From positions 65,534,001-65,598,000 of the forward strand of contig OZ296650.1 in the NCBI GenBank assembly GCA_965655095.1: a stretch of 64,000 nucleotides of DNA, written 5' to 3'. This document shows positions 33,901 through 50,359 of the stretch, piece by piece. The DNA is from Haplodiscus bocki (lineage: Eukaryota). The notes under the pieces are model-generated. The model saw nothing but the letters and a program-made list of their open reading frames with translations, did not search any database and was not told where the DNA came from. Made by a program: the position numbers and the translations under genes. How positions within the stretch are numbered: the stretch's first letter is position 1; each line of letters begins with the position of its first letter.

Positions 33901-35570
33901 TTGCAAGACATTTTCACGCAGAGAATCTTCTGCCCAATTCTCAATTAAGTGGAAGTCACCCGGACTCTCGATTTTGCAGCTATCTGCAAAATTGAAAATT
34001 TAGATACCACCATCACTTTGGTTGATACAGAAGACGTTTGGGAAACAATTTTGAATATGTTCAGTGAAAGGCTCTGAAATGGGGCTCCAGTGCGCAAAAA
34101 CCAAAAATTAGAGATGAAGAGCTGAGTCCGTCATCAATGAGTCGGTTTCCACAAGTACGTTCGAAATGTTACCTAATATGGGGGTCTAAAGGTACGGATG
34201 ATGGTGAATTTCAAAAAACAGAAGGATAATCTAATTGAGGTTTTTTCGTTCGAACTTTTTTCAATATCAATAGAGTCTTACTTTTTGTACAAGACAGACA
34301 TAATCCTAGTTTTGTTGCCTCAGAGAGTCCACTAGTTTTACATTGCTCAGCACCTAAGCGTTTTTTTGCAAGATATTTCGACGCAAAGAAAAATCAGGCC
34401 CAACCTCAAACAAATCGCATCCACCTGGACCCTCAATTTTTCAGCTCTCTACAAAATCGAATTTAGAGATACGGTTATCAATTTTGGGGATACAGGTTAC
34501 GTTTGGAGACCATTTTGAACGTGTCTACTCAAAAAAATCTGAAATGGGGCTCCAGGGGGCAAAAAAAAACCAAAAATGAGAGAGAAAGAGCTGAAACGGT
34601 AAGCAATGAGTCGAGTTGCGTCAGCAGATTCGAAATGTTATCTAACAAGGGGGTTCAAATTGTACGTATCATGGTGATTTTTGATAAAAACCTACAGCCC
34701 GGTTCTGGTAATTTCGTTCCGTTTACTTTCACTAGAGTTATACTTTTTGTGCGAGACAGACACAGTCCTGGTTTTGTGGCTGCAGAGAGTCCATCAGTTT
34801 TACTTTGGTCAGCATCTAATGTTTTCTTGCAAAAAAAATTGGCGCAGACAATTATTGCCCAAACTTCAAACAAATCGAGAACACCCGGACCCTCGACTTT
34901 TCGGCTATGTGCAAAATCCAAAAATGACACACGGTTATCACTTTGGGTGATATAGAACACACTTGGGAAATGATTTGGAACGATTGTAGTCAAAAAGTCT
35001 GAAAAGGGTTTCGGGGTGAAGAGGAGGGCAAATATCCAAAGTGAGAGATTGGGAGTTGAAAGCGTCACCAAAGAAACAGGCTCAATGAGTAGGTTCGCAA
35101 CGTTTTCTTACACGAGGGACCAAAATGTACGGATCATGGTGATTTTTGGAAAACAAAAGTATAGCCCGTTTCAGGTACTTTCGTTCTAAATTTTTTGAAT
35201 AGAGTCATACATTTTGTGTAAGACTTACACATTCTTGGTTTTATGGCTGCAGGGATCCAACTGTTGTACTTTGCTCAGCATCTAACTGTTTCTTTGAAAG
35301 ACATTTTGACGGAGAAAAAAGTCGGCCCAAACCTCAAAGAAATGGAGAACACCTGGACCCTCGACTTTCTGGAAAATCAACTTTTGAGATACGGCCGTCA
35401 CTTTGGATGATATAAAACGCGTTTGGGAAACGATTCTGAACGTGCCTGGTCAAAATATCTGAAATGGGGCTCGAGGGGGCAGAAATTAGACTTGAGATAT
35501 AGAGAGCTGACACCGTTACCAATGAGTCGGGTTCTTTGAGTAGGTTCGAAATGCCTTTTGAAACGAGAGT
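18901..35570. repeat. Satellite layer C: interleaved 3-mer (~1381 bp) and 4-mer (~1848 bp) HORs
   Basis: Near-identical spurious ORFs at 20704/22552/23934/25314 (spacings 1848, 1382, 1380), 23479/24860 (1381) and 27634/29483 (1849). Confidence 0.88.
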
Positions 35571-35770
35571 NNNNNNNNNNNNNNNNNNNNNNNNNNNNNN
35601 NNNNNNNNNNNNNNNNNNNNNNNNNNNNNNNNNNNNNNNNNNNNNNNNNNNNNNNNNNNNNNNNNNNNNNNNNNNNNNNNNNNNNNNNNNNNNNNNNNNN
35701 NNNNNNNNNNNNNNNNNNNNNNNNNNNNNNNNNNNNNNNNNNNNNNNNNNNNNNNNNNNNNNNNNNNNNN
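35571..35770. other. Assembly gap (200 N)
   Basis: Exactly 200 N; a round number typical of an arbitrary-size scaffolding join. Confidence 0.99.
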
Positions 35771-36229
35771 CTTCTAGGTTTTAATCGAGAAATTTCTACA
35801 TAAAGAAAATCATTCGAAATATAATTGCTTGGTTTTGATTGTTCCATTGTAATCTTGATAAACTGCGTAAGGCAAGAGTTGCCATCAAAAATGGCGTCTC
35901 CTGACATTCCTGCTTAACTTTCTCGAAACTATCTGCTTCATTTCTAAACTTAAGTCACAATCGATATTATTCAGATTGTAAAAGAGCATTGTGTAGTAAA
36001 TTTGGAATTGTGTACATTAGATCGGCACTGTCAGGGACCGAAAATGGCGGAAAAATCCAATCGTTGGAACTTTTCTTCATCTTCGAACTCGGTTTCCTAT
36101 TCCAAAACAACTGGCTATTTTTTGCTTCAAGGCCTTAACAGAAAATTATTCTTATGTACATGGATTTTCATCAAGTAGGTGTCAGGTTTTCATCATGTTA
36201 TTGAATCTTGATAGCACCAGTTAGTCAAA

Positions 36230-37935: not shown

Positions 37936-38755
37936 ACTTTGTGCGCATTGTGCTTGACGAAGCAGTTTTTTTAGTTTTAGTTACGCATCAATTTGACTTG
38001 CGAAGGCGAAAACTTGCCTCGAACGATTTTCGGTGTCAAATAAAATTTTGCAGCACACTTCAATGTTATTCTATGTAATATTTTCAAATAAAGATATCGC
38101 AGCAGTTTTCGATTCATATATTTGGATTCCAAACGACAACTCTCTGAGTTACATTTGAGTATTTCATTGAAATTTTTTTTCACTATAAGCAAACTTCGGA
38201 AAACGGGGTTCTAAAAAGTGCGTTCTAATCCAACGTCTGGCCAGTATCAAGTCAAAAAGGTCATTCCTGAGAGAAAAAAAACAACAGCGATATTTGAATT
38301 ACGTTCTCATAAAAGTTTTGAGCGATTTCCATAACCCTCTTAGCACAAGAACATGTGATCAGTAGTAAGTATACTACTGCATAACAACAAATGCATATTT
38401 ATAATGTTAAATGAATACAATGAATATTTTCAAAGAAAATTCAGTCAATTTCACCGTTGTCAAATCAGACGTACGGAGACGGGAACAACACAGATATTTT
38501 AGGAAAAGACATTAGTTAATTATAATAATTAACATCAGATCACTCCTTTATACAAGAAAATTTACAAAGCAACAACCCAAGAACTAATTATAATCCATCA
38601 TTTTCCCACTTGATTTTCGACGATCCATAATCTTTACTTGAATTGCATGGTTGGATAAAGGCTTTGGGCACAACGGTTAGAAAGATCAATTCGACGAGTT
38701 CAATTACTTGTGGTGGCATCTTTAGTAACTTGAAACTCGATCTACTAAAATGGTG

Positions 38756-38761
38756 TTTATT
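38756..38761 (-). promoter_or_regulatory. Candidate polyadenylation signal (AATAAA) of KDELR
   Basis: First canonical AATAAA I found on the minus strand after the KDELR stop (~505 nt downstream); positional inference only. Confidence 0.3.
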
Positions 38762-39266
38762 ATAACTTGTGAGGCAATGACATTTGTATCTCTTTGTATG
38801 GGACTGTTTTATATGCTACACCATTTGATGAAGCATTGAATTACTTGAAGCCATTTCTTTTGTATAAAGAAGCATGTAAATACAATTTGCAATTTTTGTC
38901 GTCGTGTACATTTTAAATGCTTTTAGTAAACATTTCACGTTCCACGTCGGCGGTATCAGCGGCAAAGGATATATATCTTATCTTTGTGTTCAATTCAAAA
39001 AACGATTTTAGTTCAGTGACTTGACATACGTACAGTACAATGAATTATGTGCACATATGTTCCAGTAGATGAAGAATTTTGCGAATAATGGTTCAATAAA
39101 AAGCTTGAAAATAAAGTGCTCAAAAATTGCATACTTTGCCGTTGTTTGGAAAAGAAAACACATTTTCCAAGTTTTGATAGCTGATTCAAGAAAGTTTGTC
39201 AGATATTGTCAATCAAGCCATTCCAACTTGCTCTTGACCAGCTTCCGACTCAAGGGATGATATTGT

Positions 39267-39301
39267 TTAGGCTGGAAGAGTGAGCGATTTTCCTTTCAAC
39301 A
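39267..39301 (-). CDS. KDELR: KDELR coding exon 4 ([11 protein letters not shown])
   Basis: TTTCAG acceptor, phase 1, TAA at 39269-39267; absent from the ORF track. Confidence 0.93.
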
Positions 39302-42300
39302 CTGAAACGAAGTTCATTGAAAATAAAGAAAGGGACAACGTACCAAGTGCCACTTAGATGATAAAAGAACAAATCTTAAATTGATTAATTATGTATATAT
39401 CAAATGCTATTTGCTGGGTTTTGAAATTACGACAATGGTAGGTCTCTTTACTATACTAAATTATTATCTAGAAATCTTTGCACATAGAAATTAAATAATA
39501 ACGGAACTGAATGGAAGCTCAAGTTGATGTATATTCTTTTTTCTGGAGACAAAACAGCTTTTGTTCAAAACATCGAGGCTTGAACGTATCTTGCGATGAG
39601 AATATTAGAGAGAATATTTCGCAAATCACAATATCATAGCGTTGTAACTTTAACCACCAAAATTTTTCACAGAAGCATAGAAAAGTTGAAAATGTTAACA
39701 AAGTTAGCATTTTGTAAACCAGGAAAGAATTTAACAAACCTTTGGTGATGTAGAGGTAAAAGAAGTCACAATATAGAACAGTTTGTACACAGCCAGCCAC
39801 GATGGCGATTAAGTCAAAAAATCCTTCAGTATAGTATCTGTAGACCCAGTTCAGAATGTAGAGACCTCGGTACAATCCCAAAGCGAACAGATAATGCGAC
39901 GTAATCGACTCAGCCTCCCCAGTTTTGCTAATCATGAACAGCTGAGGCAGAATGGCGACAGACTCCAGATAGATCGAGAAAGTCCACAAAATCTAAATTA
40001 GTAAAAGTCAGACATCTTCTTAAAGTTTTCATTTTGCTCAACATTGAGATTCCTGAAACGCCTTCAAGTAAAAGCACAGCAACGATTTTTCATTTCATGA
40101 CTATGGAAATTGATTGTAATTTTTGTTCAACGCCTTAGTACCAAATTTGACGTCTTTGGTACTCGTGTTGACCACACCTTTAGAACGTACCAAGAACCAG
40201 CATATATTGTAAATGAGAAACATACACCAAAAAAACTTGCGAAGGCAAAAACCAGCATTTCTTGAAGGAGTCGACCACCACAACTAAGAATTTTTTCCTG
40301 TTGCCCTTAACATGAAACAATTTTCGGGAAAAGAGTACAACAAAATTTTTTGAAGATTCTCACTCAATGCATTGGCACCAAAAGTATAATCGTAAAAATT
40401 ATTAAAGATTCGGCAATGTGAGACGTAAATTTTTAGGAGTAAACCCGCGATTATACTTAATTTTTTCTCTACAAGTGGTCCCCGTGCATATGTTGAGCGA
40501 TACGCTCGGCGCCGACTTGGGTCGTTCCCCGGTTGTTTAAAGATGGTGCAAGGGCATTGCAATCCGAAATCAAACAGCGCAATGCGATTTCATGCACGAG
40601 CCGAGATACAATGAACTAGGTTTCTAGCGATGAGAAAACGAGGAATTCTAGAAAAGCAAAGGTAATGCAAATTGTAATTTGACTTTGTTTGAACACAGCA
40701 TAGGTGAACTATGAATAATGCTTGAAACTTAACAGATGCTTTCAAAGAATGTACCGACCTCAAGAAGAGAGAAGTCGTGATTGACGAGGACAGCGAGTCC
40801 TGCGACGGGTACAACGAGGAACTCAGGTCGGAAGGTGTCGTGATTACCGTCATATGTTGCTTTGAACTTGAAGTAAATTAGATAGACAGTGGCCGCACTG
40901 GCAAAGATGTAGAAGATCTTCATCGATGTATTGTAGACTGATATGAACGTCGTGAACAAATCCAAATACCTAGTCAGAAACACCATTAGGAACAGCAATT
41001 GACTCTTTCCCGATAAACCTGAAACATTTCAGCTCCATAGTCCACAAATGCTACACTTTTCATTCAAGGTCACAGAAACACAATTCATCTCGATTGCACG
41101 TTCTCAGTCAGAAGTTTGATAACCTTTTGAGTTATTTTCATACTTTGCTTGTCGATTTATACACCAACAAGCATGACAAAATATAAACATAAATGAGGTA
41201 AAACGTTTGAGGACTCTTTGTACTTCGAAATACTTCAAGTAAACGTTTAACAAAATAAGATTGGAGCCACTAAATTGTCATCTTTAATTTTAAGGTACGA
41301 AAACTTTGAAATCACATGCGTATTGTAAGTTAAAAGACACAGCAAAATTGATTTTCTTGTCATCATTTGACTCCTACGTTTTATTTCACAGGAAGAAGGT
41401 ACGTGTGATACATATGCCCTCCTAAGCAGAAATTTAAGAGCATTAATAAACTCCAACCACTAATACCGAAAAACAAGATATTCTTTAATACACGCAATTA
41501 CGAAAAGTTCCAATGCATTTCAAATTATATCATTCAAACTTGTTTTCAACCGATGGTAGCTCTCATTGAAAGTTAAGTACCAAACATAATTTACAAATGG
41601 TTCACGATACCTCTTAAGTGAATAAATTATTTGAGCTCGTCGAAAACACATTTGGAGCATAAAACTTCTAAGGGGAATGTCAAGGACATTTCAAATGAAA
41701 ATGTAACTGCAACTAGATGTCATCATTTCATTTGAAATTTTCAGGATAGAAACACAATAATACAATTAGAAAATACTTTAAATTTAGATGGAAGTTTCCT
41801 TTTTTGAAAGGTGTTTGATAATTGAATTTGTGATGAGTATTTATTCTTCACAGATGACGAAAAAAAAGAATGCATTTCCGCATGGTATGCACAAGTTTTC
41901 TGTTTATAAATGCCTCGAACTCGTTAAACGTTTTTGAAGACGCCAGGTTACCACCGAGGTATTTTCGGCCGCCCAGTTTTGTTGGAAATGCGTTTTAGAA
42001 AACTTCTTGACTGAAGGAAAAGTTACTTTCTTATATTCATTCTACAGCAAATTTGCCAACTTCTGCCAATTTGAAAACCTTTTTTGTTCAACACAAACCC
42101 TAAAATTCGGCGAAAAGGCATTTCCAGAAATATTATCATAATATTATTATTTTCAGCCCATTTTTAGATTTATAATATGGAAAATCATCCACTCAACAAG
42201 GTTCGTTTTTACGCTTACTTGCAACTTGTCCGGGTAGAATGACTGGCGGACGATTCTGAATTTGAATTTTTTAATCACCAAATTATAGCAAATTTGCCGC

Positions 42301-45300: not shown

Positions 45301-46141
45301 TAGAGCAAATTTCCAATAATTCGGAGATAAAAATGTCAAACACAAAATCGTGCAACTAAAAAATTTATGTTGAAAAAAAAACACGCAACGAGAAGATGAC
45401 TTTTCTTATATGTTGAAAGATGGGCGGAAAACTTTAGGGAATCAAAGATGGTTATTTGATTTGTGAGGTTTTTTTTCCACACAACAGCCAACACTTATTT
45501 TTGCTTTATTGTCTTTCTTGATGTCTGCGCTTTATAACTCATTCTCAAAACTAGCCATTCTCACTGAGAACATGAATCAAATGAAAAGAATCACAGGAAT
45601 AAAGATACACGTCGAGGACACTAAGGCTACGAAATAAGGAAAGTGAAAGAGAAAGCAAGCCATTTCTTTGTAACTTTACTGAGAAATTTTGCTTGGAAAA
45701 AGCAAAAGTATCAAGCGAATAAAAATGATACACACTCACAAACTTTGCATGGATTAGCAAAGACCTGAATGGTGAACTGAATAAATTTGCAGCCAATTAT
45801 GATCTACTCAAAATTGAACGAAAGCTAATGGAGGCGTTCTCTAGCTACGCAGATTAGTAGAAATGAACAATAATCACACCCACGAGGTTCCAAAAAATAA
45901 GCAGACAGTCTATTCTACTCTCGGAATTTCATTCTTCTCTACTCCCGTTATTTTTCATTTACTACTGGTATCAAGCTTTTGGGATGCAGCGCAGAAAAGT
46001 AAAAGCAGGCTATTGCTGAATGCCAAATAATGCTTTGAAAAGTTACGAACCAGCGCATGATCTGCTTTTCCATATTTTCCATAACAGCAGACAAATGGCC
46101 AACAAATGAGATAAATCACCAGTGAGTCTGAACACGTTCAT
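39267..46141 (-). CDS. KDELR: ER lumen protein-retaining (KDEL) receptor, 212 aa; join(46141-46051, 41018-40759, 39992-39740, 39301-39267)
   Basis: Exons of 91+260+253+35 = 639 nt, all GT-AG with compatible phases. Protein [37 protein letters not shown]...RYLDLF...DTFRPEFL...[10 protein letters not shown]...[22 protein letters not shown] is a typical ERD2/KDELR. Confidence 0.97.
39740..39992 (-). CDS. KDELR: KDELR coding exon 3 ([18 protein letters not shown]...YLYITK)
   Basis: TTTAG acceptor, G|GTTTGT donor, 253 nt; overlaps ORF 39519..39989. Confidence 0.96.
40759..41018 (-). CDS. KDELR: KDELR coding exon 2 (GLSGKSQ...NHDFSLLE)
   Basis: TTTCAG acceptor, GAG|GTCGGT donor, 260 nt; overlaps ORF 40729..40998. 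Confidence 0.96.
41937..42630. mobile_element. Degenerate non-autonomous foldback/MITE-like element in KDELR intron 1
   Basis: GGTTACCACCG (41946-41956) is inverted at 42611-42621. The next 44 nt inward match 30/44 in inverted orientation, with further patchy inverted similarity ~180 nt in (GAAAAGGCATTTCCAGAAATA vs GAAAAGACATTTTCAAGAAATA). No clear TSD and no coding capacity. Confidence 0.6.
46051..46141 (-). CDS. KDELR: KDELR coding exon 1 ([31 protein letters not shown])
   Basis: ATG at 46141-46139, 91 nt, G|GTTCGT donor; absent from the ORF track. Intron 1 is 5032 nt. Confidence 0.96.
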
Positions 46142-46150
46142 GTCTGAGAT

Positions 46151-46162
46151 CTGAAAGAACTA
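46151..46162 (-). promoter_or_regulatory. 3' splice acceptor-like site (GTTCTTTCAG) 9 nt upstream of the KDELR ATG
   Basis: Minus strand reads GTTAGTTCTTTCAG|ATCTCAGAC ATG; same TTTCAG as the exon 2 and exon 4 acceptors. Confidence 0.55.
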
Positions 46163-46444
46163 ACGATTTTGTAACAACCTTTGTCATGTACTGAATAAGG
46201 TTTTATAACTACCATCCATATCACTTTATCATGGTAGATTAGCTCAAAGAAGAGTACAAACGAAAACAATTTTCAAAGCGGTGCAAAAATAAATTTTTCC
46301 AAAAATAATTACCAATTTATATTTGTGAACGGTACAACACCTTGCGAATACAACTCAGTCAGATATTCAAATCAATCAAATACACTTCAGATAAAAACAA
46401 TTCTGGATAAACAAAATACGAATTTAATTAAAATTAAATCACGT

Positions 46445-48373
46445 TCAGGTCCAAACGTCTTCTTTAATTTGTTTTGGATCTTGTCGCATCTTTATAACAA
46501 TGCTTCGAGCTTCAGCGTTTGAAACAGACATGAAATTCTGCACGATATCAATCAGCGCTTCGTTGATATCTTTTGCCATGTTCAGCGCGTCACCGCAAAT
46601 GTACACTTGTGCTTTCTTGTTCATTATGAGATCACCAAATTTCTCATAATCTCTTCGTAGAATGTCTTGCACATACTTTTCAGAAGACTCGGCGTCTCGT
46701 GAAAAACAGACAAGCAACTCAGTCAAAATTCCCGTCTCAACAAATGCGTTCAGCTCCTCTTCAAATAGGAAATCATTCAGTTTGGTACGGCAACCAAAAA
46801 GCAAATACACCGGTCCCAGTTTCTCACTTCCTTCATGACCGAATTCATGTTTCAACTTGCGATGTCTGAGGAAACCCATGAAAGGAGCAACTCCGGTGCC
46901 TGGTCCAATGAGGACCAGTGGTACTGACGGATCTTCAGGCATTCTGAAACTCTTATTACTTCTGAGGAAAAGAGGTATTCTTATAGGCATTAGCTGATCA
47001 TGAAGTTTCCCCAAGTAGTGTTCCATCCATCCAGAAGCCAAACCTTTCCTGTCCCTTCGAGTTTCAGTCCTTCCAATTTCAACAACATTGAAAACGAAGC
47101 TGAAGCAGTTATTGTTCTCTAATGGTGAAGAAGCGAAGGAGTATGGCCTTGGAAGTAAAACAGGAAGGTGCTCGATGATGCGCTCGACAGGTGGATGGCA
47201 ATTTTTGAACATGTTCAGAATATCCAAAAGCGTCAACATTTCTTCGCGTAGTTTATTGTACTTTTCTGTCCCTTGGCGGGAGCTCAAAAGCAATAAGTCA
47301 TTGAATTCAGTTTCATCGTGAGTGTACTGTGACAGAAGTAAGAAGAAAGCTTTTTTGAAAGGAGTCGATGCAAAATCGACACAATAGAGAAAGATATATC
47401 TTAGAGTAGTGATTTCAGGAATGTGATTGAACGAGCTACTTGACTTTGAACTGTTCACCATACACGTTCTTTGCATCGGAATATCCGCAATTTGACTTAC
47501 ATGCAGTCTTTCCATCAACTCACTTACAATTTCGCTATCATTCGGTAAAACTACTGAGAAAGAATCTCCTGGTTGATAGTCAATTTCGCCTTGAATTTGG
47601 ACCAGTAAAGTTTGTTTTTTGGATTCCATGCCAGATATTCTTTTGATGTCTTTCAATGTGTAGAAATACAACGGAGACGCCATTCCAAAATAAGCGTTTT
47701 CGCCTTGAGGCTGACTCGGTAAGCTGAAAAATTTGAAGAGCATTGAAGGTTTGGGCATAATAGGTAACTTGAGAGTACTGGTGTTCTTAAAGTCGCACTT
47801 TTCTGAAGGTCTTAACTCATTACAGCTATATAAGAAGGGACGATCTAACATATAAAACTGTTCTTGTTGTTTTTCTACCACGCCATTGACAGAAGACTCT
47901 TCTGGTTCACTATCAAGAGGAGCAGCTTTCAGAATATTCAAAACCTTGTTTGTGAATTCTTCCACTTGATCTTCAAAACCAACCGCATCGTCTCCACAGA
48001 TAGTTTTGAACAAGTGCTTTGCTCCTTTAGATAGCAGTAGGGATTCAACTGTTTTACCACCTCCACAAAATATACTGTAGTTAGTATCCCCGAGCGCCAG
48101 TAGCCCAAAAGACATTGACGATAAATGATTACTTGACCAATCTGTTTTCCTGAAATCTCGGAAGAACTTTAAACAAGAATCCGGCATATCTCCATCACCA
48201 GTCGTCGCAACGATCAGAAAAGCGTTTTTAACTGTTTCTAAATCATTGACCTGCATCCGGTCAAACGATGTCAATGAGCACTTCAAATTCGATTCTCTAA
48301 CAAGACCATCAATGCCTTCAGCGATTGACTTTGATTGCCCCGTTTGGGATCCATAGATCAACAAGTTACTCAT
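46445..48373 (-). CDS. MTRR: Methionine synthase reductase (diflavin FMN/FAD/NADPH oxidoreductase), 642 aa, single coding exon
   Basis: Flavodoxin motifs YGSQTGQSKSIAE, ATTGDGDMP, LALGDTNY..FCGGGK; FAD-domain YQPGDSF, EHLPVLLPRPYSFASS, RKGLASGW; NADPH-domain GPGTGVAPF, FGCR, FSRD, KYVQD, YICGDALNMAKD, terminal EDVWT. No N-terminal membrane anchor (argues against POR). DDAVG, KKAF, SRQG..Y and FVFNVVE match MTRR better than NDOR1. Confidence 0.93.
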   Translation of the reverse strand: MSNLLIYGSQTGQSKSIAEGIDGLVRESNLKCSLTSFDRMQVNDLETVKNAFLIVATTGDGDMPDSCLKFFRDFRKTDWSSNHLSSMSFGLLALGDTNYSIFCGGGKTVESLLLSKGAKHLFKTICGDDAVGFEDQVEEFTNKVLNILKAAPLDSEPEESSVNGVVEKQQEQFYMLDRPFLYSCNELRPSEKCDFKNTSTLKLPIMPKPSMLFKFFSLPSQPQGENAYFGMASPLYFYTLKDIKRISGMESKKQTLLVQIQGEIDYQPGDSFSVVLPNDSEIVSELMERLHVSQIADIPMQRTCMVNSSKSSSSFNHIPEITTLRYIFLYCVDFASTPFKKAFFLLLSQYTHDETEFNDLLLLSSRQGTEKYNKLREEMLTLLDILNMFKNCHPPVERIIEHLPVLLPRPYSFASSPLENNNCFSFVFNVVEIGRTETRRDRKGLASGWMEHYLGKLHDQLMPIRIPLFLRSNKSFRMPEDPSVPLVLIGPGTGVAPFMGFLRHRKLKHEFGHEGSEKLGPVYLLFGCRTKLNDFLFEEELNAFVETGILTELLVCFSRDAESSEKYVQDILRRDYEKFGDLIMNKKAQVYICGDALNMAKDINEALIDIVQNFMSVSNAEARSIVIKMRQDPKQIKEDVWT

Positions 48374-50359
48374 ACGCCTTAAATAAGTAATGTGACGTAG
48401 CCTTGTGCTACGAGACCCAATTTATACATTTAACCAACGCCAATTAAAAAATAAGCCGGAACGGCCAAGTAGGCGTTACACATAAAGTAGTAAATATCAA
48501 CGGTCCTTTTTTTGAAATTATGACTTTTCAGACAAAAATATGGTTTCATCGCAATTTTTTCTGAAAATTTGGTTTCACGGCGGCGGAAATTAGTAAAAGG
48601 ATTCTTTGTTACAATATTTACAGGCAGAGGAAATCAATATTTCAGAAATCATTGGTATTTTCCTTTGCATAAAAGGTTTGCCATATGCTCGGAGGGTGTG
48701 ACGAAAAAATTTGGGACCGAAGGTCCGAAATTTAGTCATACAAAAGAACGCTATGTTCACGTTTTCTGTACTGTTTGTAATTGTTAGTAGTATACAGCCG
48801 TTCTCGAAAAATACTATTCTTTTTGGAAGTGCGCGAAATCGACTCTTCATTTTCATCAAATACACGGTGGAAAAGAACTAGTCACTGCAATAGATGGGAA
48901 CTCTTCCCATTTTGTAAAGAGCCGACTAACAAGCGGAGAACAGGCCAAAAACGACGTCTCCCGAAAAGTACAAAATATCAATGGGAACTCCTTTATGAAA
49001 CACGTTTCAGAAATTGGACCTCTTCTAAGGGTCTTCAAACTTTTGTGTTTGTATTAACCCAGAAACTAAGGAAGAAAGAAAGACTTTATTTTCCACATAC
49101 GCATCTTAAATGACATATACACTTGAAAGGAGAAATATCCTGCATATGCATATGTAGAGGACCCTCTATAAGGTCTTAACCTTTTCGAGAGAGGACCCGA
49201 AAGCTCCAAAGCTATGTCGAAGCATTTGTTAGTTTAGTTTCTCAGACTTCGAAATATGAGTTCGGCTAGTGTCTCAGGGCAGCTGCTGTTTTTTGCTCCT
49301 CTTACCTTATGCATTAGTTGGTTTTCTGACCATTGAAGTATGTTATCGTTAGATTAATAATTTGCGATGAAGTAATTTAATACTTTTGAACCGCGGTTTT
49401 TTATAGACTGATCTTCTCGCAAGTTCGAAGTACGAAGATGGTAAAAGGCACCGCTACTTACACTCCTCGTTTCATGAACATTAAAGCGTGTCTTATAGAA
49501 GCTGTTAAGAAAACAGGAGCAGTTTTCTCCGCGCACTGATTTAAGACAGAGTTTAAGGAGCTCCATAGCGTACAAGCGTTCGTTCAAGAGAAAGAACCCC
49601 CACTCGAAATTGTCTATAACTGTTTAACTCGTCTATCACCTGAAGAAAATGAACATGTTATTCACAGCATATGGTCATTTCGCAGGTTAGATTGAGATCG
49701 TAAATTTTCAAAATTCAGCAACTAACTAACTTTTCATCCCCAGTCCGTATTAAATCGAACATTCACCAGACATTTTTCCCCCAACTGTGATTTCATTGAA
49801 TCAAATAGTTGACTCTGTGTGTCTTGTGATCGTTGATTTTCAGAAATTTCAGTTCTTCCTACATGCTTGAGGATAAACATCGTCACTTTGAAAAAAATCA
49901 GAGTATTCATGGTACAAGGCCTACTACGAGCGGACCACATGGCGCCATACCTCGGGGACGTCAATGGAACAGTCTGTTTCGAAACCAAGTGAAAATGTTT
50001 ATCTCCGTCAGCCAACTGATAGTGATTTGTATACCGGCCGTGTCGCAAGTCTGACAAGAAGGTATTGTTCTGACGCCCACAAATAAACTGCTACAGTTAT
50101 AACATAATGATAAATACTGCTTCAGATGGATCCTCCTATAGGCAGAAGCCTTTTTATGGAGTACCTAGTTTAACAAGTTTCAAAAAAATCAGATCTGTTA
50201 ACCCTTCAATTCAAACAACAAACTTCGGTTTCTTAAGAGGTTTTGTGAAGCAATTCTACAAGGCTGTGGGACCTTTGAAAGGATCAAATACCAATTTCAT
50301 TGAGATTTTCTTTAGTTTAGTAAATCCTAGCATAAGAGACGTCTTCTGGTATAAGACAT

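What the first reader, a model, noticed from the sequence alone, without database searches (positions are those of the whole stretch)
46051..48430. MTRR-KDELR: candidate eukaryotic operon or co-transcribed gene pair
Seen: the MTRR stop (46445) is only 303 nt upstream of the KDELR ATG (46141) on the same strand, although KDELR introns reach 5 kb and the flanks are gene-empty. The spacer is U-rich on the sense strand, has only variant poly(A) signals (ATTAAA 46428-46423; AATATAAA 46323-46316) and ends in TTCTTTCAG 9 nt before the ATG. Established: short spacer + upstream poly(A) site + unpaired acceptor is the architecture of SL trans-spliced operons in nematodes, tunicates and flatworms. Inference: KDELR is a downstream cistron. 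Alternatives: a 162-nt cis intron from G|GTAATT (46312), which would place KDELR's first exon over the MTRR 3' UTR, or a compact own promoter (TATAAAA at 46207-46201). I know of no described MTRR-KDELR linkage.
Basis: partly seen in the sequence, partly recalled or inferred. Interest (0 to 1): 0.7.

Follow-up and report, generated by a model that had tools for sequence, protein, structure and literature searches.

The report
Conserved MTRR-KDELR candidate operon, acoel worm
In an acoel worm genome, two unrelated housekeeping genes (MTRR and the KDEL receptor) lie 303 bases apart on the same strand, and this pairing is kept in at least four acoel species, which fits a two-gene operon resolved by spliced-leader trans-splicing, although no RNA was available to show that both genes are copied into one transcript.

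Summary
An intronless 642-aa MTRR gene (48373-46445, minus strand) ends 303 nt before the ATG (46141) of a four-exon KDEL receptor gene. A TTCTTTCAG acceptor lies 9 nt before that ATG.

The window comes from an acoel, a group with published spliced-leader (SL) trans-splicing but no published operons.

New evidence:
- **Conserved pairing.** The pairing, with spacers of 198-303 nt, is kept in a sister species, in Symsagittifera roscoffensis and in Convolutriloba macropyga. MTRR identity falls to 55% across these species. Flanks and introns are not conserved.
- **Acceptors.** Every species has a strong acceptor 2-9 nt before the KDELR ATG. Every species also has one shortly before the MTRR ATG.
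- **RNA from a relative.** An RNA contig from a fifth acoel joins the last 10 nt of the published SL to the KDELR start codon.
- **Spacer motif.** All four spacers carry a conserved tandem TATTTTTG element.

Co-transcription could not be tested. The only sequencing runs that hold this DNA are genomic. An operon is the best reading (about 0.55). An own KDELR promoter inside the spacer remains a serious rival.

The scan has already noted similar unproven operon candidates elsewhere in this genome. Verdict: new member of a known kind, moderate interest.

The parts
46445..48373 (-). MTRR (methionine synthase reductase) coding sequence, a single exon of 642 aa including the stop
   Evidence: ORF. 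Pfam finds Flavodoxin_1, FAD_binding_1 and NAD_binding_1. Best PDB match is human MTRR at 1e-83. Orthologues of 642 aa occur in S. roscoffensis and C. macropyga.
48378..48390 (-). Acceptor-like TTACTTATTTAAG, 4 nt before the MTRR ATG; candidate SL addition site for MTRR
   Evidence: Sequence. A stronger TTTCAG acceptor lies 4 nt before the ATG in the sister species and in S. roscoffensis, and 12 nt before it in C. macropyga. No RNA test was possible.
48421..48426 (-). TATAAA about 45 nt upstream of the MTRR acceptor; possible core promoter element of the unit
   Evidence: Sequence only. Not conserved in relatives. Unique sequence ends about 48745, where contig depth rises and contigs break.
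46142..46444 (-). 303-nt spacer between the MTRR stop and the KDELR ATG, 42% T on the sense strand
   Evidence: Orthologous spacers are 267, 198 and 273 nt. It aligns with the sister species far better than shuffled sequence does (z 9.5 global, 14.8 local), although synonymous sites are saturated.
46322..46336 (-). Conserved block TGTACCGTTCACAAA in the presumed MTRR 3' UTR
Evidence: 14 of 15 bases identical in the sister species.
46281..46308 (-). Tandem U-rich element (TATTTTTG twice, at 46307-46300 and 46291-46284)
   Evidence: TATTTTTG is invariant in all four spacers. It occurs twice in three of them; the fourth has it once plus ACTTTTTG. The 10-mer TATTTTTGYA occurs once in the whole 64-kb window, and that occurrence is here. 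No significant RNA structure.
46201..46207 (-).
   Evidence: Present. Only loosely matched by A/T-rich strings at similar distances in the relatives. Function untested.
46151..46159 (-). TTCTTTCAG acceptor; predicted SL trans-splice site between 46151 and 46150
   Evidence: An acceptor is conserved 9, 2 and 2 nt before the ATG in the three other species. The SL 3' end is joined 1-2 nt before the ATG of the KDELR mRNA of another acoel. Four upstream ATGs lie 37-82 nt before the acceptor and would be removed by splicing.
46051..46150 (-). KDELR exon 1 (9-nt 5' UTR plus codons 1-31); donor GT at 46050-46049
   Evidence: 100% and 97% identical at the protein level in the relatives.
40759..41018 (-). 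KDELR exon 2
   Evidence: PF00810.
39740..39992 (-). KDELR exon 3
   Evidence: PF00810.
38270..39301 (-). KDELR exon 4: the last 11 codons, stop at 39269-39267, and a ~1-kb 3' UTR with conserved blocks
   Evidence: Block-wise conservation with the sister species extends to about 38270.

Best explanation
MTRR and KDELR form a two-gene, spliced-leader-resolved operon that is conserved among acoels.

Proposed mechanism:
1. Transcription starts upstream of MTRR. The promoter is not located; it is somewhere above the acceptor at 48378.
2. Transcription runs through the intronless MTRR and the 303-nt spacer into KDELR.
3. The MTRR mRNA is released by 3' end cleavage about 130-160 nt past its stop, near the conserved tandem UAUUUUUG element (46308-46281).
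4. The KDELR mRNA gets its capped 5' end from the acoel spliced leader, joined at 46151|46150, 9 nt before the ATG.

Shown here:
- the anatomy of the locus;
- conservation of the pair, the acceptors and the U-rich element in four species;
- SL addition at the homologous site of the KDELR mRNA in a related acoel.

Inferred, not shown:
- a single primary transcript;
- the position of the MTRR poly(A) site;
- any role of the U-rich element;
- SL addition in this species itself.
For: 1. **Geometry.** Same strand, 303 nt from stop to ATG. The acoel genomes are sparse: about 34,500 genes in 1.1 Gb (PMC9911081). In S. roscoffensis no other annotated gene lies within 7.8 kb upstream or 8.6 kb downstream of the pair.
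2. **Conserved linkage.** The pair is conserved in a sister species (MTRR 80% identical, spacer 267), in S. roscoffensis (56%, 198) and in C. macropyga (55%, 273). Over the same divergence KDELR intron 1 ranges from about 0.5 to 5 kb, and nothing outside the two genes is conserved. Insertions are therefore tolerated around the spacer but not inside it.
3. **Acceptors.** A pyrimidine-rich CAG acceptor lies 2-9 nt before the KDELR ATG in all four species.
4. **RNA from a relative.** Logan RNA contig L007 (a spliced KDELR cDNA of a fifth acoel) reads adapter, then ATTAAATAGA, then C, then ATG. ATTAAATAGA is exactly the last 10 nt of the published SL.
5. **Upstream ATGs.** Upstream ATGs crowd the last 16-90 nt before the acceptor in every species, so the mature 5' end is most likely made by splicing.
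6. **Constraint on the spacer.** The spacer is constrained even though synonymous sites are saturated. It carries an invariant tandem TATTTTTG motif about 80-130 nt upstream of the acceptor.
7. **Conservation pattern.** Between the window and its sister species, the alignment starts exactly at the MTRR ATG and ends at the KDELR exon 1 donor. This is the pattern of a transcribed block.
Against: - There is no RNA evidence for a transcript spanning the spacer in any species. The only runs holding this DNA are genomic.
- No canonical AATAAA lies in the spacer, and the variant hexamers are not conserved, so the MTRR 3' end is not located.
- A TATA-like string lies 50-60 nt upstream of the acceptor in each species. 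This would also fit a compact own promoter with a short outron.
- RefSeq annotates two separate genes in S. roscoffensis and C. macropyga.
- MTRR has its own acceptor before its ATG. Trans-splicing here is therefore not specific to downstream cistrons.
- Only one SL is known in acoels, so there is no SL2-type marker.
- Operons have not been published for acoels.
Confidence: 0.55

Rival explanations
1. The two genes are separate transcription units. KDELR has its own compact promoter inside the spacer (for example around TATAAAA at 46207-46201) or within the MTRR 3' region. It makes a short outron that is removed by SL trans-splicing at 46151|46150. Under this reading the tight linkage is kept because the KDELR promoter overlaps the end of MTRR.
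For: TATA-like strings lie about 50-60 nt upstream of the acceptor in all four species. SL trans-splicing in acoels affects 30% of genes and is not tied to operons. MTRR itself has an acceptor before its ATG. RefSeq models the genes separately, and the C. macropyga KDELR model extends colinearly at least 21 nt upstream of the acceptor.
Against: The stretch between the U-rich element and the acceptor is the least conserved part of the spacer (40-47% identity with the sister species), so no promoter block stands out. TATA-like strings are common in sequence that is 70% A+T. If the MTRR poly(A) site and a KDELR promoter were independent, insertions between them should be tolerated. Yet the spacer stayed at 198-303 nt in four lineages while neighbouring introns changed tenfold.
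Confidence: 0.28
2. KDELR has a non-coding first exon that overlaps the MTRR 3' UTR. It is cis-spliced from the donor G|GTAATT (GT at 46312-46311) to the acceptor at 46151, removing a 162-nt intron. The transcript would start within or upstream of the MTRR 3' UTR.
For: A usable donor lies at 46312 in the window. A better one (AAG|GTAAAT) lies at the equivalent place in S. roscoffensis, in both cases directly before the first TTATTTTTG.
Against: The sister species has no GT there, and C. macropyga has only a weak GTATTT. The KDELR cDNA of another acoel carries the SL, not a genomic leader exon, directly before the ATG.
Confidence: 0.07
3. This is an origin hypothesis and is compatible with either transcription model. 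MTRR is an old retrogene that landed in the 5' region of KDELR in an acoel ancestor. The adjacency would then be a frozen accident rather than a selected operon.
For: MTRR is intronless in three of four acoels, whereas the scallop orthologue has 12 introns. The single C. macropyga intron lies at a position not shared with the scallop gene, so it may be a later gain.
Against: No SL remnant lies before the MTRR ATG: 218 of 1000 shuffles score as well. No poly(A) tract or target-site duplication is visible. Nematostella MTRR is also intronless, so loss of introns in this gene is not special to this locus. A frozen accident does not explain why the spacer stayed short.
Confidence: 0.15

Closest known systems
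Spliced-leader-resolved operons of nematodes (C. elegans SL2 type)
   Same: Unrelated housekeeping genes lie head to tail, and the spacer is of the order of 100-300 nt. A U-rich element sits between the upstream 3' end and the downstream trans-splice acceptor. The downstream mRNA is capped by a spliced leader close to its ATG. The comparison with the nematode Ur element rests on my own knowledge (Lasda, Allen and Blumenthal 2010) and was not tested here.
   Different: Only one SL is known in acoels, with no SL2-type leader specific to downstream genes. The stop-to-ATG distance of 198-303 nt includes the whole upstream 3' UTR. Co-transcription and the function of the U-rich element are not shown.
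Operons of chaetognaths, tunicates, flatworms and rotifers, as defined operationally from genome and RNA-seq data
   Same: The chaetognath study calls an operon any run of same-strand genes less than 250 bp apart in which at least one gene is SL trans-spliced, and it found no operon-specific leader (PMC12460157). The S. roscoffensis pair (198 nt, CDS to CDS) would probably pass that test. Its spacing passes, but SL addition has not been shown for either gene in S. roscoffensis itself.
   Different: The window's own pair is 303 nt CDS to CDS and passes only if the MTRR 3' UTR is counted as gene. No SL-read evidence exists for this species. No operon has been reported for Acoela or Xenacoelomorpha in the searched literature.
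SL trans-splicing of monocistronic genes in the acoel Symsagittifera roscoffensis
   Same: Same phylum and same leader. The 3' end of the published 32-nt SL is found joined to an acoel KDELR mRNA. An acceptor lies just before the ATG of both genes.
   Different: That paper reports 30.2% of genes as trans-spliced. It uses trans-splice and poly(A) peaks to 'separate trans-spliced genes', but does not describe operons or this gene pair.

Membership tests
Metazoan SL trans-spliced operon | Two or more genes on the same strand separated by a very short spacer (about 100-500 nt; less than 250 bp in the operational definition of PMC12460157) | tested here: met
   303 nt stop to ATG in the window; 267, 198 and 273 nt in three other acoels. 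Only the S. roscoffensis pair is under 250 nt measured CDS to CDS.
Metazoan SL trans-spliced operon | The organism performs SL trans-splicing | tested here: met
   The window's proteins are closest to S. roscoffensis and C. macropyga. An SL is published for S. roscoffensis. Its 3' end is seen on an acoel KDELR cDNA. No SL copy lies in the window itself.
Metazoan SL trans-spliced operon | The downstream gene's mRNA carries the SL at an acceptor in the spacer | tested here: inconclusive
   Met for the orthologue in another acoel (L007), and the acceptor is conserved in four species. No RNA of the window's species was available.
Metazoan SL trans-spliced operon | One promoter and one polycistronic primary transcript spanning the spacer | not testable with these tools
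   The four runs holding the stretch are DNA contigs. No RNA contig encoding an acoel MTRR is on record. The metagenome scan found no acoel MTRR.
Metazoan SL trans-spliced operon | The upstream gene's 3' end is formed inside the spacer, upstream of the trans-splice site | tested here: inconclusive
   Only variant hexamers are present, and they are not conserved. A conserved UGUA-containing block and a tandem U-rich element at 46336-46281 suit a 3' processing region, but no poly(A) site was mapped.
Methionine synthase reductase (MTRR) | Diflavin reductase architecture (flavodoxin, FAD-binding and NADPH-binding domains), closer to MTRR than to cytochrome P450 reductase | tested here: met
   Pfam finds three domains in order. 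PDB: human MTRR 1e-83 against CPR 2e-63. The named database hits are MTRR of molluscs, cnidarians, echinoderms and vertebrates.
KDEL (ER lumen protein-retaining) receptor | PF00810 domain over a ~212-aa seven-helix protein with the conserved N-terminus | tested here: met
   PF00810 on exons 2 and 3. The spliced protein is 212 aa and 94% identical to S. roscoffensis KDELR2-like.

The most novel reading that the evidence does not exclude
MTRR-KDELR is a true operon that predates the split of the Symsagittifera/Convolutriloba clade from the window's clade. The invariant tandem UAUUUUUG element in its spacer would be the acoel counterpart of the nematode Ur element: an intercistronic signal that couples cleavage of the upstream mRNA to SL addition on the downstream one, in a phylum with a single SL and no described operons. 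The operon may have arisen when an intronless MTRR retrocopy inserted between the KDELR promoter and its first exon and was tolerated because SL trans-splicing rescued KDELR.
Probability: 0.2. Interest if true: 0.7.

Novelty: new member of a known kind. Interest (0 to 1): 0.45.

Why it matters
SL-resolved operons are known from a patchy set of animal phyla and are thought to have arisen several times. Acoels sit at a debated, possibly early-branching position among bilaterians. They have SL trans-splicing, but no operon has been described for them.

A gene pair whose tight linkage, acceptors and a spacer motif are conserved across four acoel genomes is a concrete and cheap test case. One RT-PCR, or a look at existing S. 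roscoffensis RNA-seq and 3'-end data, would settle whether acoels have operons. If they do, the conserved U-rich motif is a candidate intercistronic signal that can be compared with the nematode Ur element.

There is also a practical consequence. Gene models in acoel genomes that ignore the SL site are wrong at the 5' end. One example is the 7-residue N-terminal extension in the C. macropyga KDELR RefSeq protein.

Tried and rejected
- **Read laying.** The four runs that hold the stretch come from one study and are colinear genomic contigs. They cover the introns and the upstream flank at flat depth, so they say nothing about RNA.
- **Exact look-up of the window's MTRR protein.** Not on record.
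- **Look-up of the S. roscoffensis MTRR.** Only genome contigs, no RNA contig.
- **Metagenome/metatranscriptome scan with an acoel MTRR alignment.** The best hit is 35% identical, so nothing acoel was found.
- **SL copy in the window.** None. A retro-copied SL before MTRR is rejected, because 218 of 1000 shuffles score as well. An SL-like string over the TATAAAA region before KDELR (18 of 22 matches) is not significant (70 of 1000 shuffles) and is not conserved in the sister species.
- **Rfam on 35600-64000.** No family found.
- **Folding of the conserved spacer element in four species.** z-scores are -0.1 to -1.0, so there is no structure.
- **Bacterial-type promoter/terminator scan.** At the shuffle expectation, and irrelevant for a eukaryote.
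- **Pfam on ten flanking ORFs.** No match, so no further cistron was found upstream.
- **Test for an ancestral intron in MTRR.** The one C. macropyga intron is not at a scallop intron position, and Nematostella MTRR turned out to be intronless, so the test does not decide the retrogene question.
- **dN/dS.** Synonymous sites are saturated, so only dN could be computed (0.13 to the sister species, 0.40 to S. roscoffensis).
- **Horizontal transfer or contamination.** Rejected, because the nearest non-acoel relatives are animal MTRRs.
Full report
**1. What is in the sequence**

All features lie on the minus strand.
- A single ORF of 642 codons runs from the ATG at 48373 to the TGA at 46447-46445.
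- It has the three domains of a diflavin reductase in order: Flavodoxin_1, FAD_binding_1 and NAD_binding_1.
- It matches human methionine synthase reductase better than any cytochrome P450 reductase among solved structures (1e-83 against 2e-63).
- The named database relatives are animal MTRRs.

The KDEL receptor gene begins 303 nt downstream, with its ATG at 46141.
- I traced four coding exons: 46141-46051, 41018-40759, 39992-39740 and 39301-39267.
- They have GT..AG introns of 5032, 766 and 438 nt.
- They splice into a 212-aa protein with the canonical N- and C-termini.
- That protein is 94% identical to the protein NCBI names ER lumen protein-retaining receptor 2-like of Symsagittifera roscoffensis.

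- ATTAAA at 46428-46423;
- AATATAAA at 46323-46316;
- GT of G|GTAATT at 46312-46311;
- TATAAAA at 46207-46201;
- TTCTTTCAG at 46159-46151, 9 nt before the ATG.

On one side of the pair lies a 35-kb array of a ~465-bp satellite. On the other side lie 15 kb without any ORF that hits Pfam.

**2. What organism, and what is known about it**

Earlier notes of this scan say the genome is an acoel worm. My protein hits agree.
- The closest MTRRs and KDELRs are those of S. roscoffensis and Convolutriloba macropyga, plus unnamed ENA assemblies.
- The window's species is neither of the two named ones. Its MTRR is 55-56% identical to both.
- For S. roscoffensis a 32-nt spliced leader is published, and 30.2% of its genes are reported as SL trans-spliced. 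That paper does not mention operons (PMC9911081).
- Two full-text searches found no paper describing operons in acoels or Xenacoelomorpha.
- The scan itself has flagged several other operon candidates in this genome, none with proven co-transcription.

**3. The pairing is conserved**

I fetched the genomic loci that encode the closest MTRRs.

| Locus | Species | MTRR identity to window | Spacer, stop to ATG |
|---|---|---|---|
| L004 | same species, other assembly | 99.95% identical DNA over 10.5 kb | 303 nt |
| L001 | unnamed sister species | 80% | 267 nt |
| L002, L005, L010 | S. roscoffensis, chromosome OY783235.1 | 56% | 198 nt |
| L003 | C. macropyga (100% identical to XP_075250140.1) | 55% | 273 nt |

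- In every locus MTRR is followed on the same strand by KDELR exon 1.
- S. roscoffensis and C. macropyga MTRRs are 65% identical to each other and 55-58% identical to the window's clade. The linkage therefore predates the split of two acoel lineages.
- In the NCBI annotation of S. roscoffensis the pair is isolated. No other gene lies within 7.8 kb upstream or 8.6 kb downstream.
- Nothing else is conserved around the pair.
- KDELR intron 1 varies from about 0.5 kb to 5 kb.
- Between the window and its sister species, nucleotide similarity starts exactly at the MTRR ATG. It runs as one alignment (73%) through the spacer to the exon 1 donor and stops there. It reappears only in the KDELR exons and the ~1-kb 3' UTR.
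- Synonymous sites in MTRR are saturated between these two species. Even so, the spacer aligns far better than shuffled sequence (z 9.5 global, 14.8 local).

The spacer is therefore under constraint and has resisted the insertions that reshaped its surroundings.

**4. Splice acceptors and the spliced leader**

Acceptors before the KDELR ATG:
- window: TTCTTTCAG, 9 nt before;
- sister species: TTGTTTTCAG, 9 nt before;
- S. roscoffensis: GTTTTCCAG, 2 nt before;
- C. macropyga: TTATTTTCAG, 2 nt before.

Each spacer holds one or more upstream ATGs in the last 16-90 nt before that acceptor. A colinear leader would therefore translate poorly.

Direct RNA evidence comes from a relative.
- Logan contig L007 (run SRR12873392) is a spliced KDELR cDNA. 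Its exon junctions coincide with the genomic ones.
- It comes from a fifth acoel, 90-92% identical at the protein level.
- It begins with an Illumina adapter remnant, then ATTAAATAGA, then C, then the ATG.
- Those ten bases are exactly the 3' end of the published SL.
- The KDELR mRNA is therefore SL trans-spliced at the homologous site in at least one acoel.

A second spliced cDNA (JGI contig L006, a sixth species) starts with CCCTTATTTAG, 9 nt before its ATG. This could be a divergent leader or an unspliced acceptor. I could not test which.

MTRR also has an acceptor before its ATG in all four species. It lies 4 nt before the ATG in three species and 12 nt before it in C. macropyga. It is weakest in the window, where it reads TATTTAAG. 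MTRR is therefore probably trans-spliced too, and its transcription start lies further upstream.

**5. A conserved spacer element**

- The four-way alignment has one invariant block, TATTTTTG followed by C/T and A.
- The motif occurs twice, 7-25 nt apart, in the window (46307-46300 and 46291-46284), the sister species and C. macropyga. In S. roscoffensis it occurs once, followed by ACTTTTTG.
- The 10-mer TATTTTTGYA occurs only once in the 64-kb window on either strand, and that occurrence is here.
- The element lies 80-155 nt after the MTRR stop and 80-130 nt before the acceptor.
- It shows no significant secondary structure.
- In the window and its sister species it is preceded by a conserved TGTACCGTYCACAAA block.

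My reading is inference, not a shown result. This region is the 3' processing zone of MTRR: a UGUA-type upstream element, a degenerate signal and a U-rich downstream element. The U-rich pair may double as an intercistronic signal, like the nematode Ur element. That comparison rests on my own knowledge.

**6. What could not be done**

Co-transcription is the defining feature of an operon, and I could not test it.
- The only four runs that hold this DNA are genomic.
- No RNA contig encoding an acoel MTRR is on record.
- A scan of JGI contigs found no acoel MTRR.

**7. Weighing the explanations**

**Operon (0.55).** It explains the short, insertion-resistant spacer in a genome where genes are tens of kb apart. 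It also explains the conserved unpaired acceptor with demonstrated SL use, the upstream ATGs, and conservation that covers exactly the block from the MTRR ATG to KDELR exon 1.

**Own promoter in the spacer with a short outron (0.28).** It explains the acceptor and the SL equally well. It is helped by TATA-like strings 50-60 nt upstream of the acceptor in each species. It is also helped by the C. macropyga RefSeq model, which reads colinearly through the acceptor and adds MLILFSE to the protein. It explains the conserved shortness of the spacer less well. The candidate promoter stretch is also the least conserved part of the spacer.

**Cis-intron reading (0.07).** It has a donor in only two of four species, and the SL-bearing cDNA contradicts it.

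**Retrogene origin of MTRR (0.15).** This is compatible with either transcription model and remains possible.
- MTRR is intronless in three acoels, while the scallop gene has 12 introns.
- The lone C. macropyga intron is not at a scallop position.
- Against it: there is no SL or poly(A) remnant, and Nematostella MTRR is intronless as well.

**8. Verdict**

SL trans-splicing of KDELR at the predicted site is well supported by comparison. Operon status is likely but unproven.
- The mechanism is of a known kind: metazoan SL-resolved operons.
- What would be new is its occurrence in acoels, the specific conserved pair, and the conserved U-rich spacer element.
- Interest is moderate, because the scan has several similar unproven candidates in this genome and the phenomenon is expected in an SL-using phylum.

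Noticed in passing
window 1-35553: More than half of the window is a tandem satellite with a ~465-bp unit. There are several sub-arrays at 71-86% match, with embedded (GA)n runs. It ends at an N-run (assembly gap) near 35560-35780, which I left untouched.
   Followed up: no
L004:11330-11350 (equivalent to window ~47043): A second assembly of the same species is 99.95% identical over 10.5 kb but lacks one base inside MTRR, which splits the gene call into 460 + 188 aa. The four DNA runs laid on the window show no indel there, so this is probably an assembly error or a rare allele.
   Followed up: partly
L003:9801-10114: Convolutriloba macropyga MTRR has one 314-nt phase-1 intron after residue 110. 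The window's species, its sister species and S. roscoffensis lack it. It is not at an intron position of the scallop orthologue, so it is a candidate recent intron gain.
   Followed up: partly
L003:11960-11989 and protein P0241: The RefSeq KDELR protein of C. macropyga (219 aa) starts with MLILFSE. This is translated from the polypyrimidine tract and acceptor upstream of the true ATG. It is probably an annotation artefact of ignoring SL trans-splicing.
   Followed up: partly
L011:501-2675: The Nematostella vectensis MTRR gene (724 aa) is also a single exon, whereas the scallop Pecten maximus gene has 13 exons. Intron loss or retrocopying of MTRR has happened more than once in animals.
   Followed up: no
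window 38270-39266: The KDELR 3' UTR is about 1 kb long. It contains blocks that are up to about 90-95% identical between the window and its sister species, more conserved than the MTRR coding sequence. This suggests dense post-transcriptional regulatory elements.
   Followed up: partly
window 48745-48950: Contig depth rises three- to six-fold and the contigs of all four DNA runs break here. A dispersed repeat therefore begins about 370 nt upstream of the MTRR ATG and bounds the unique upstream region.
   Followed up: no
L006:1-20: A spliced KDELR cDNA from JGI sample 3300035569 (a sixth acoel-like species) begins with CCCTTATTTAG, 9 nt before the ATG. This is possibly the 3' end of a divergent spliced leader.
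   Followed up: no
window 46190-46217: The stretch around the TATAAAA resembles the middle of the published SL (18 of 22 matches with one gap). The match is not significant (70 of 1000 shuffles) and is not conserved in the sister species.
   Followed up: yes
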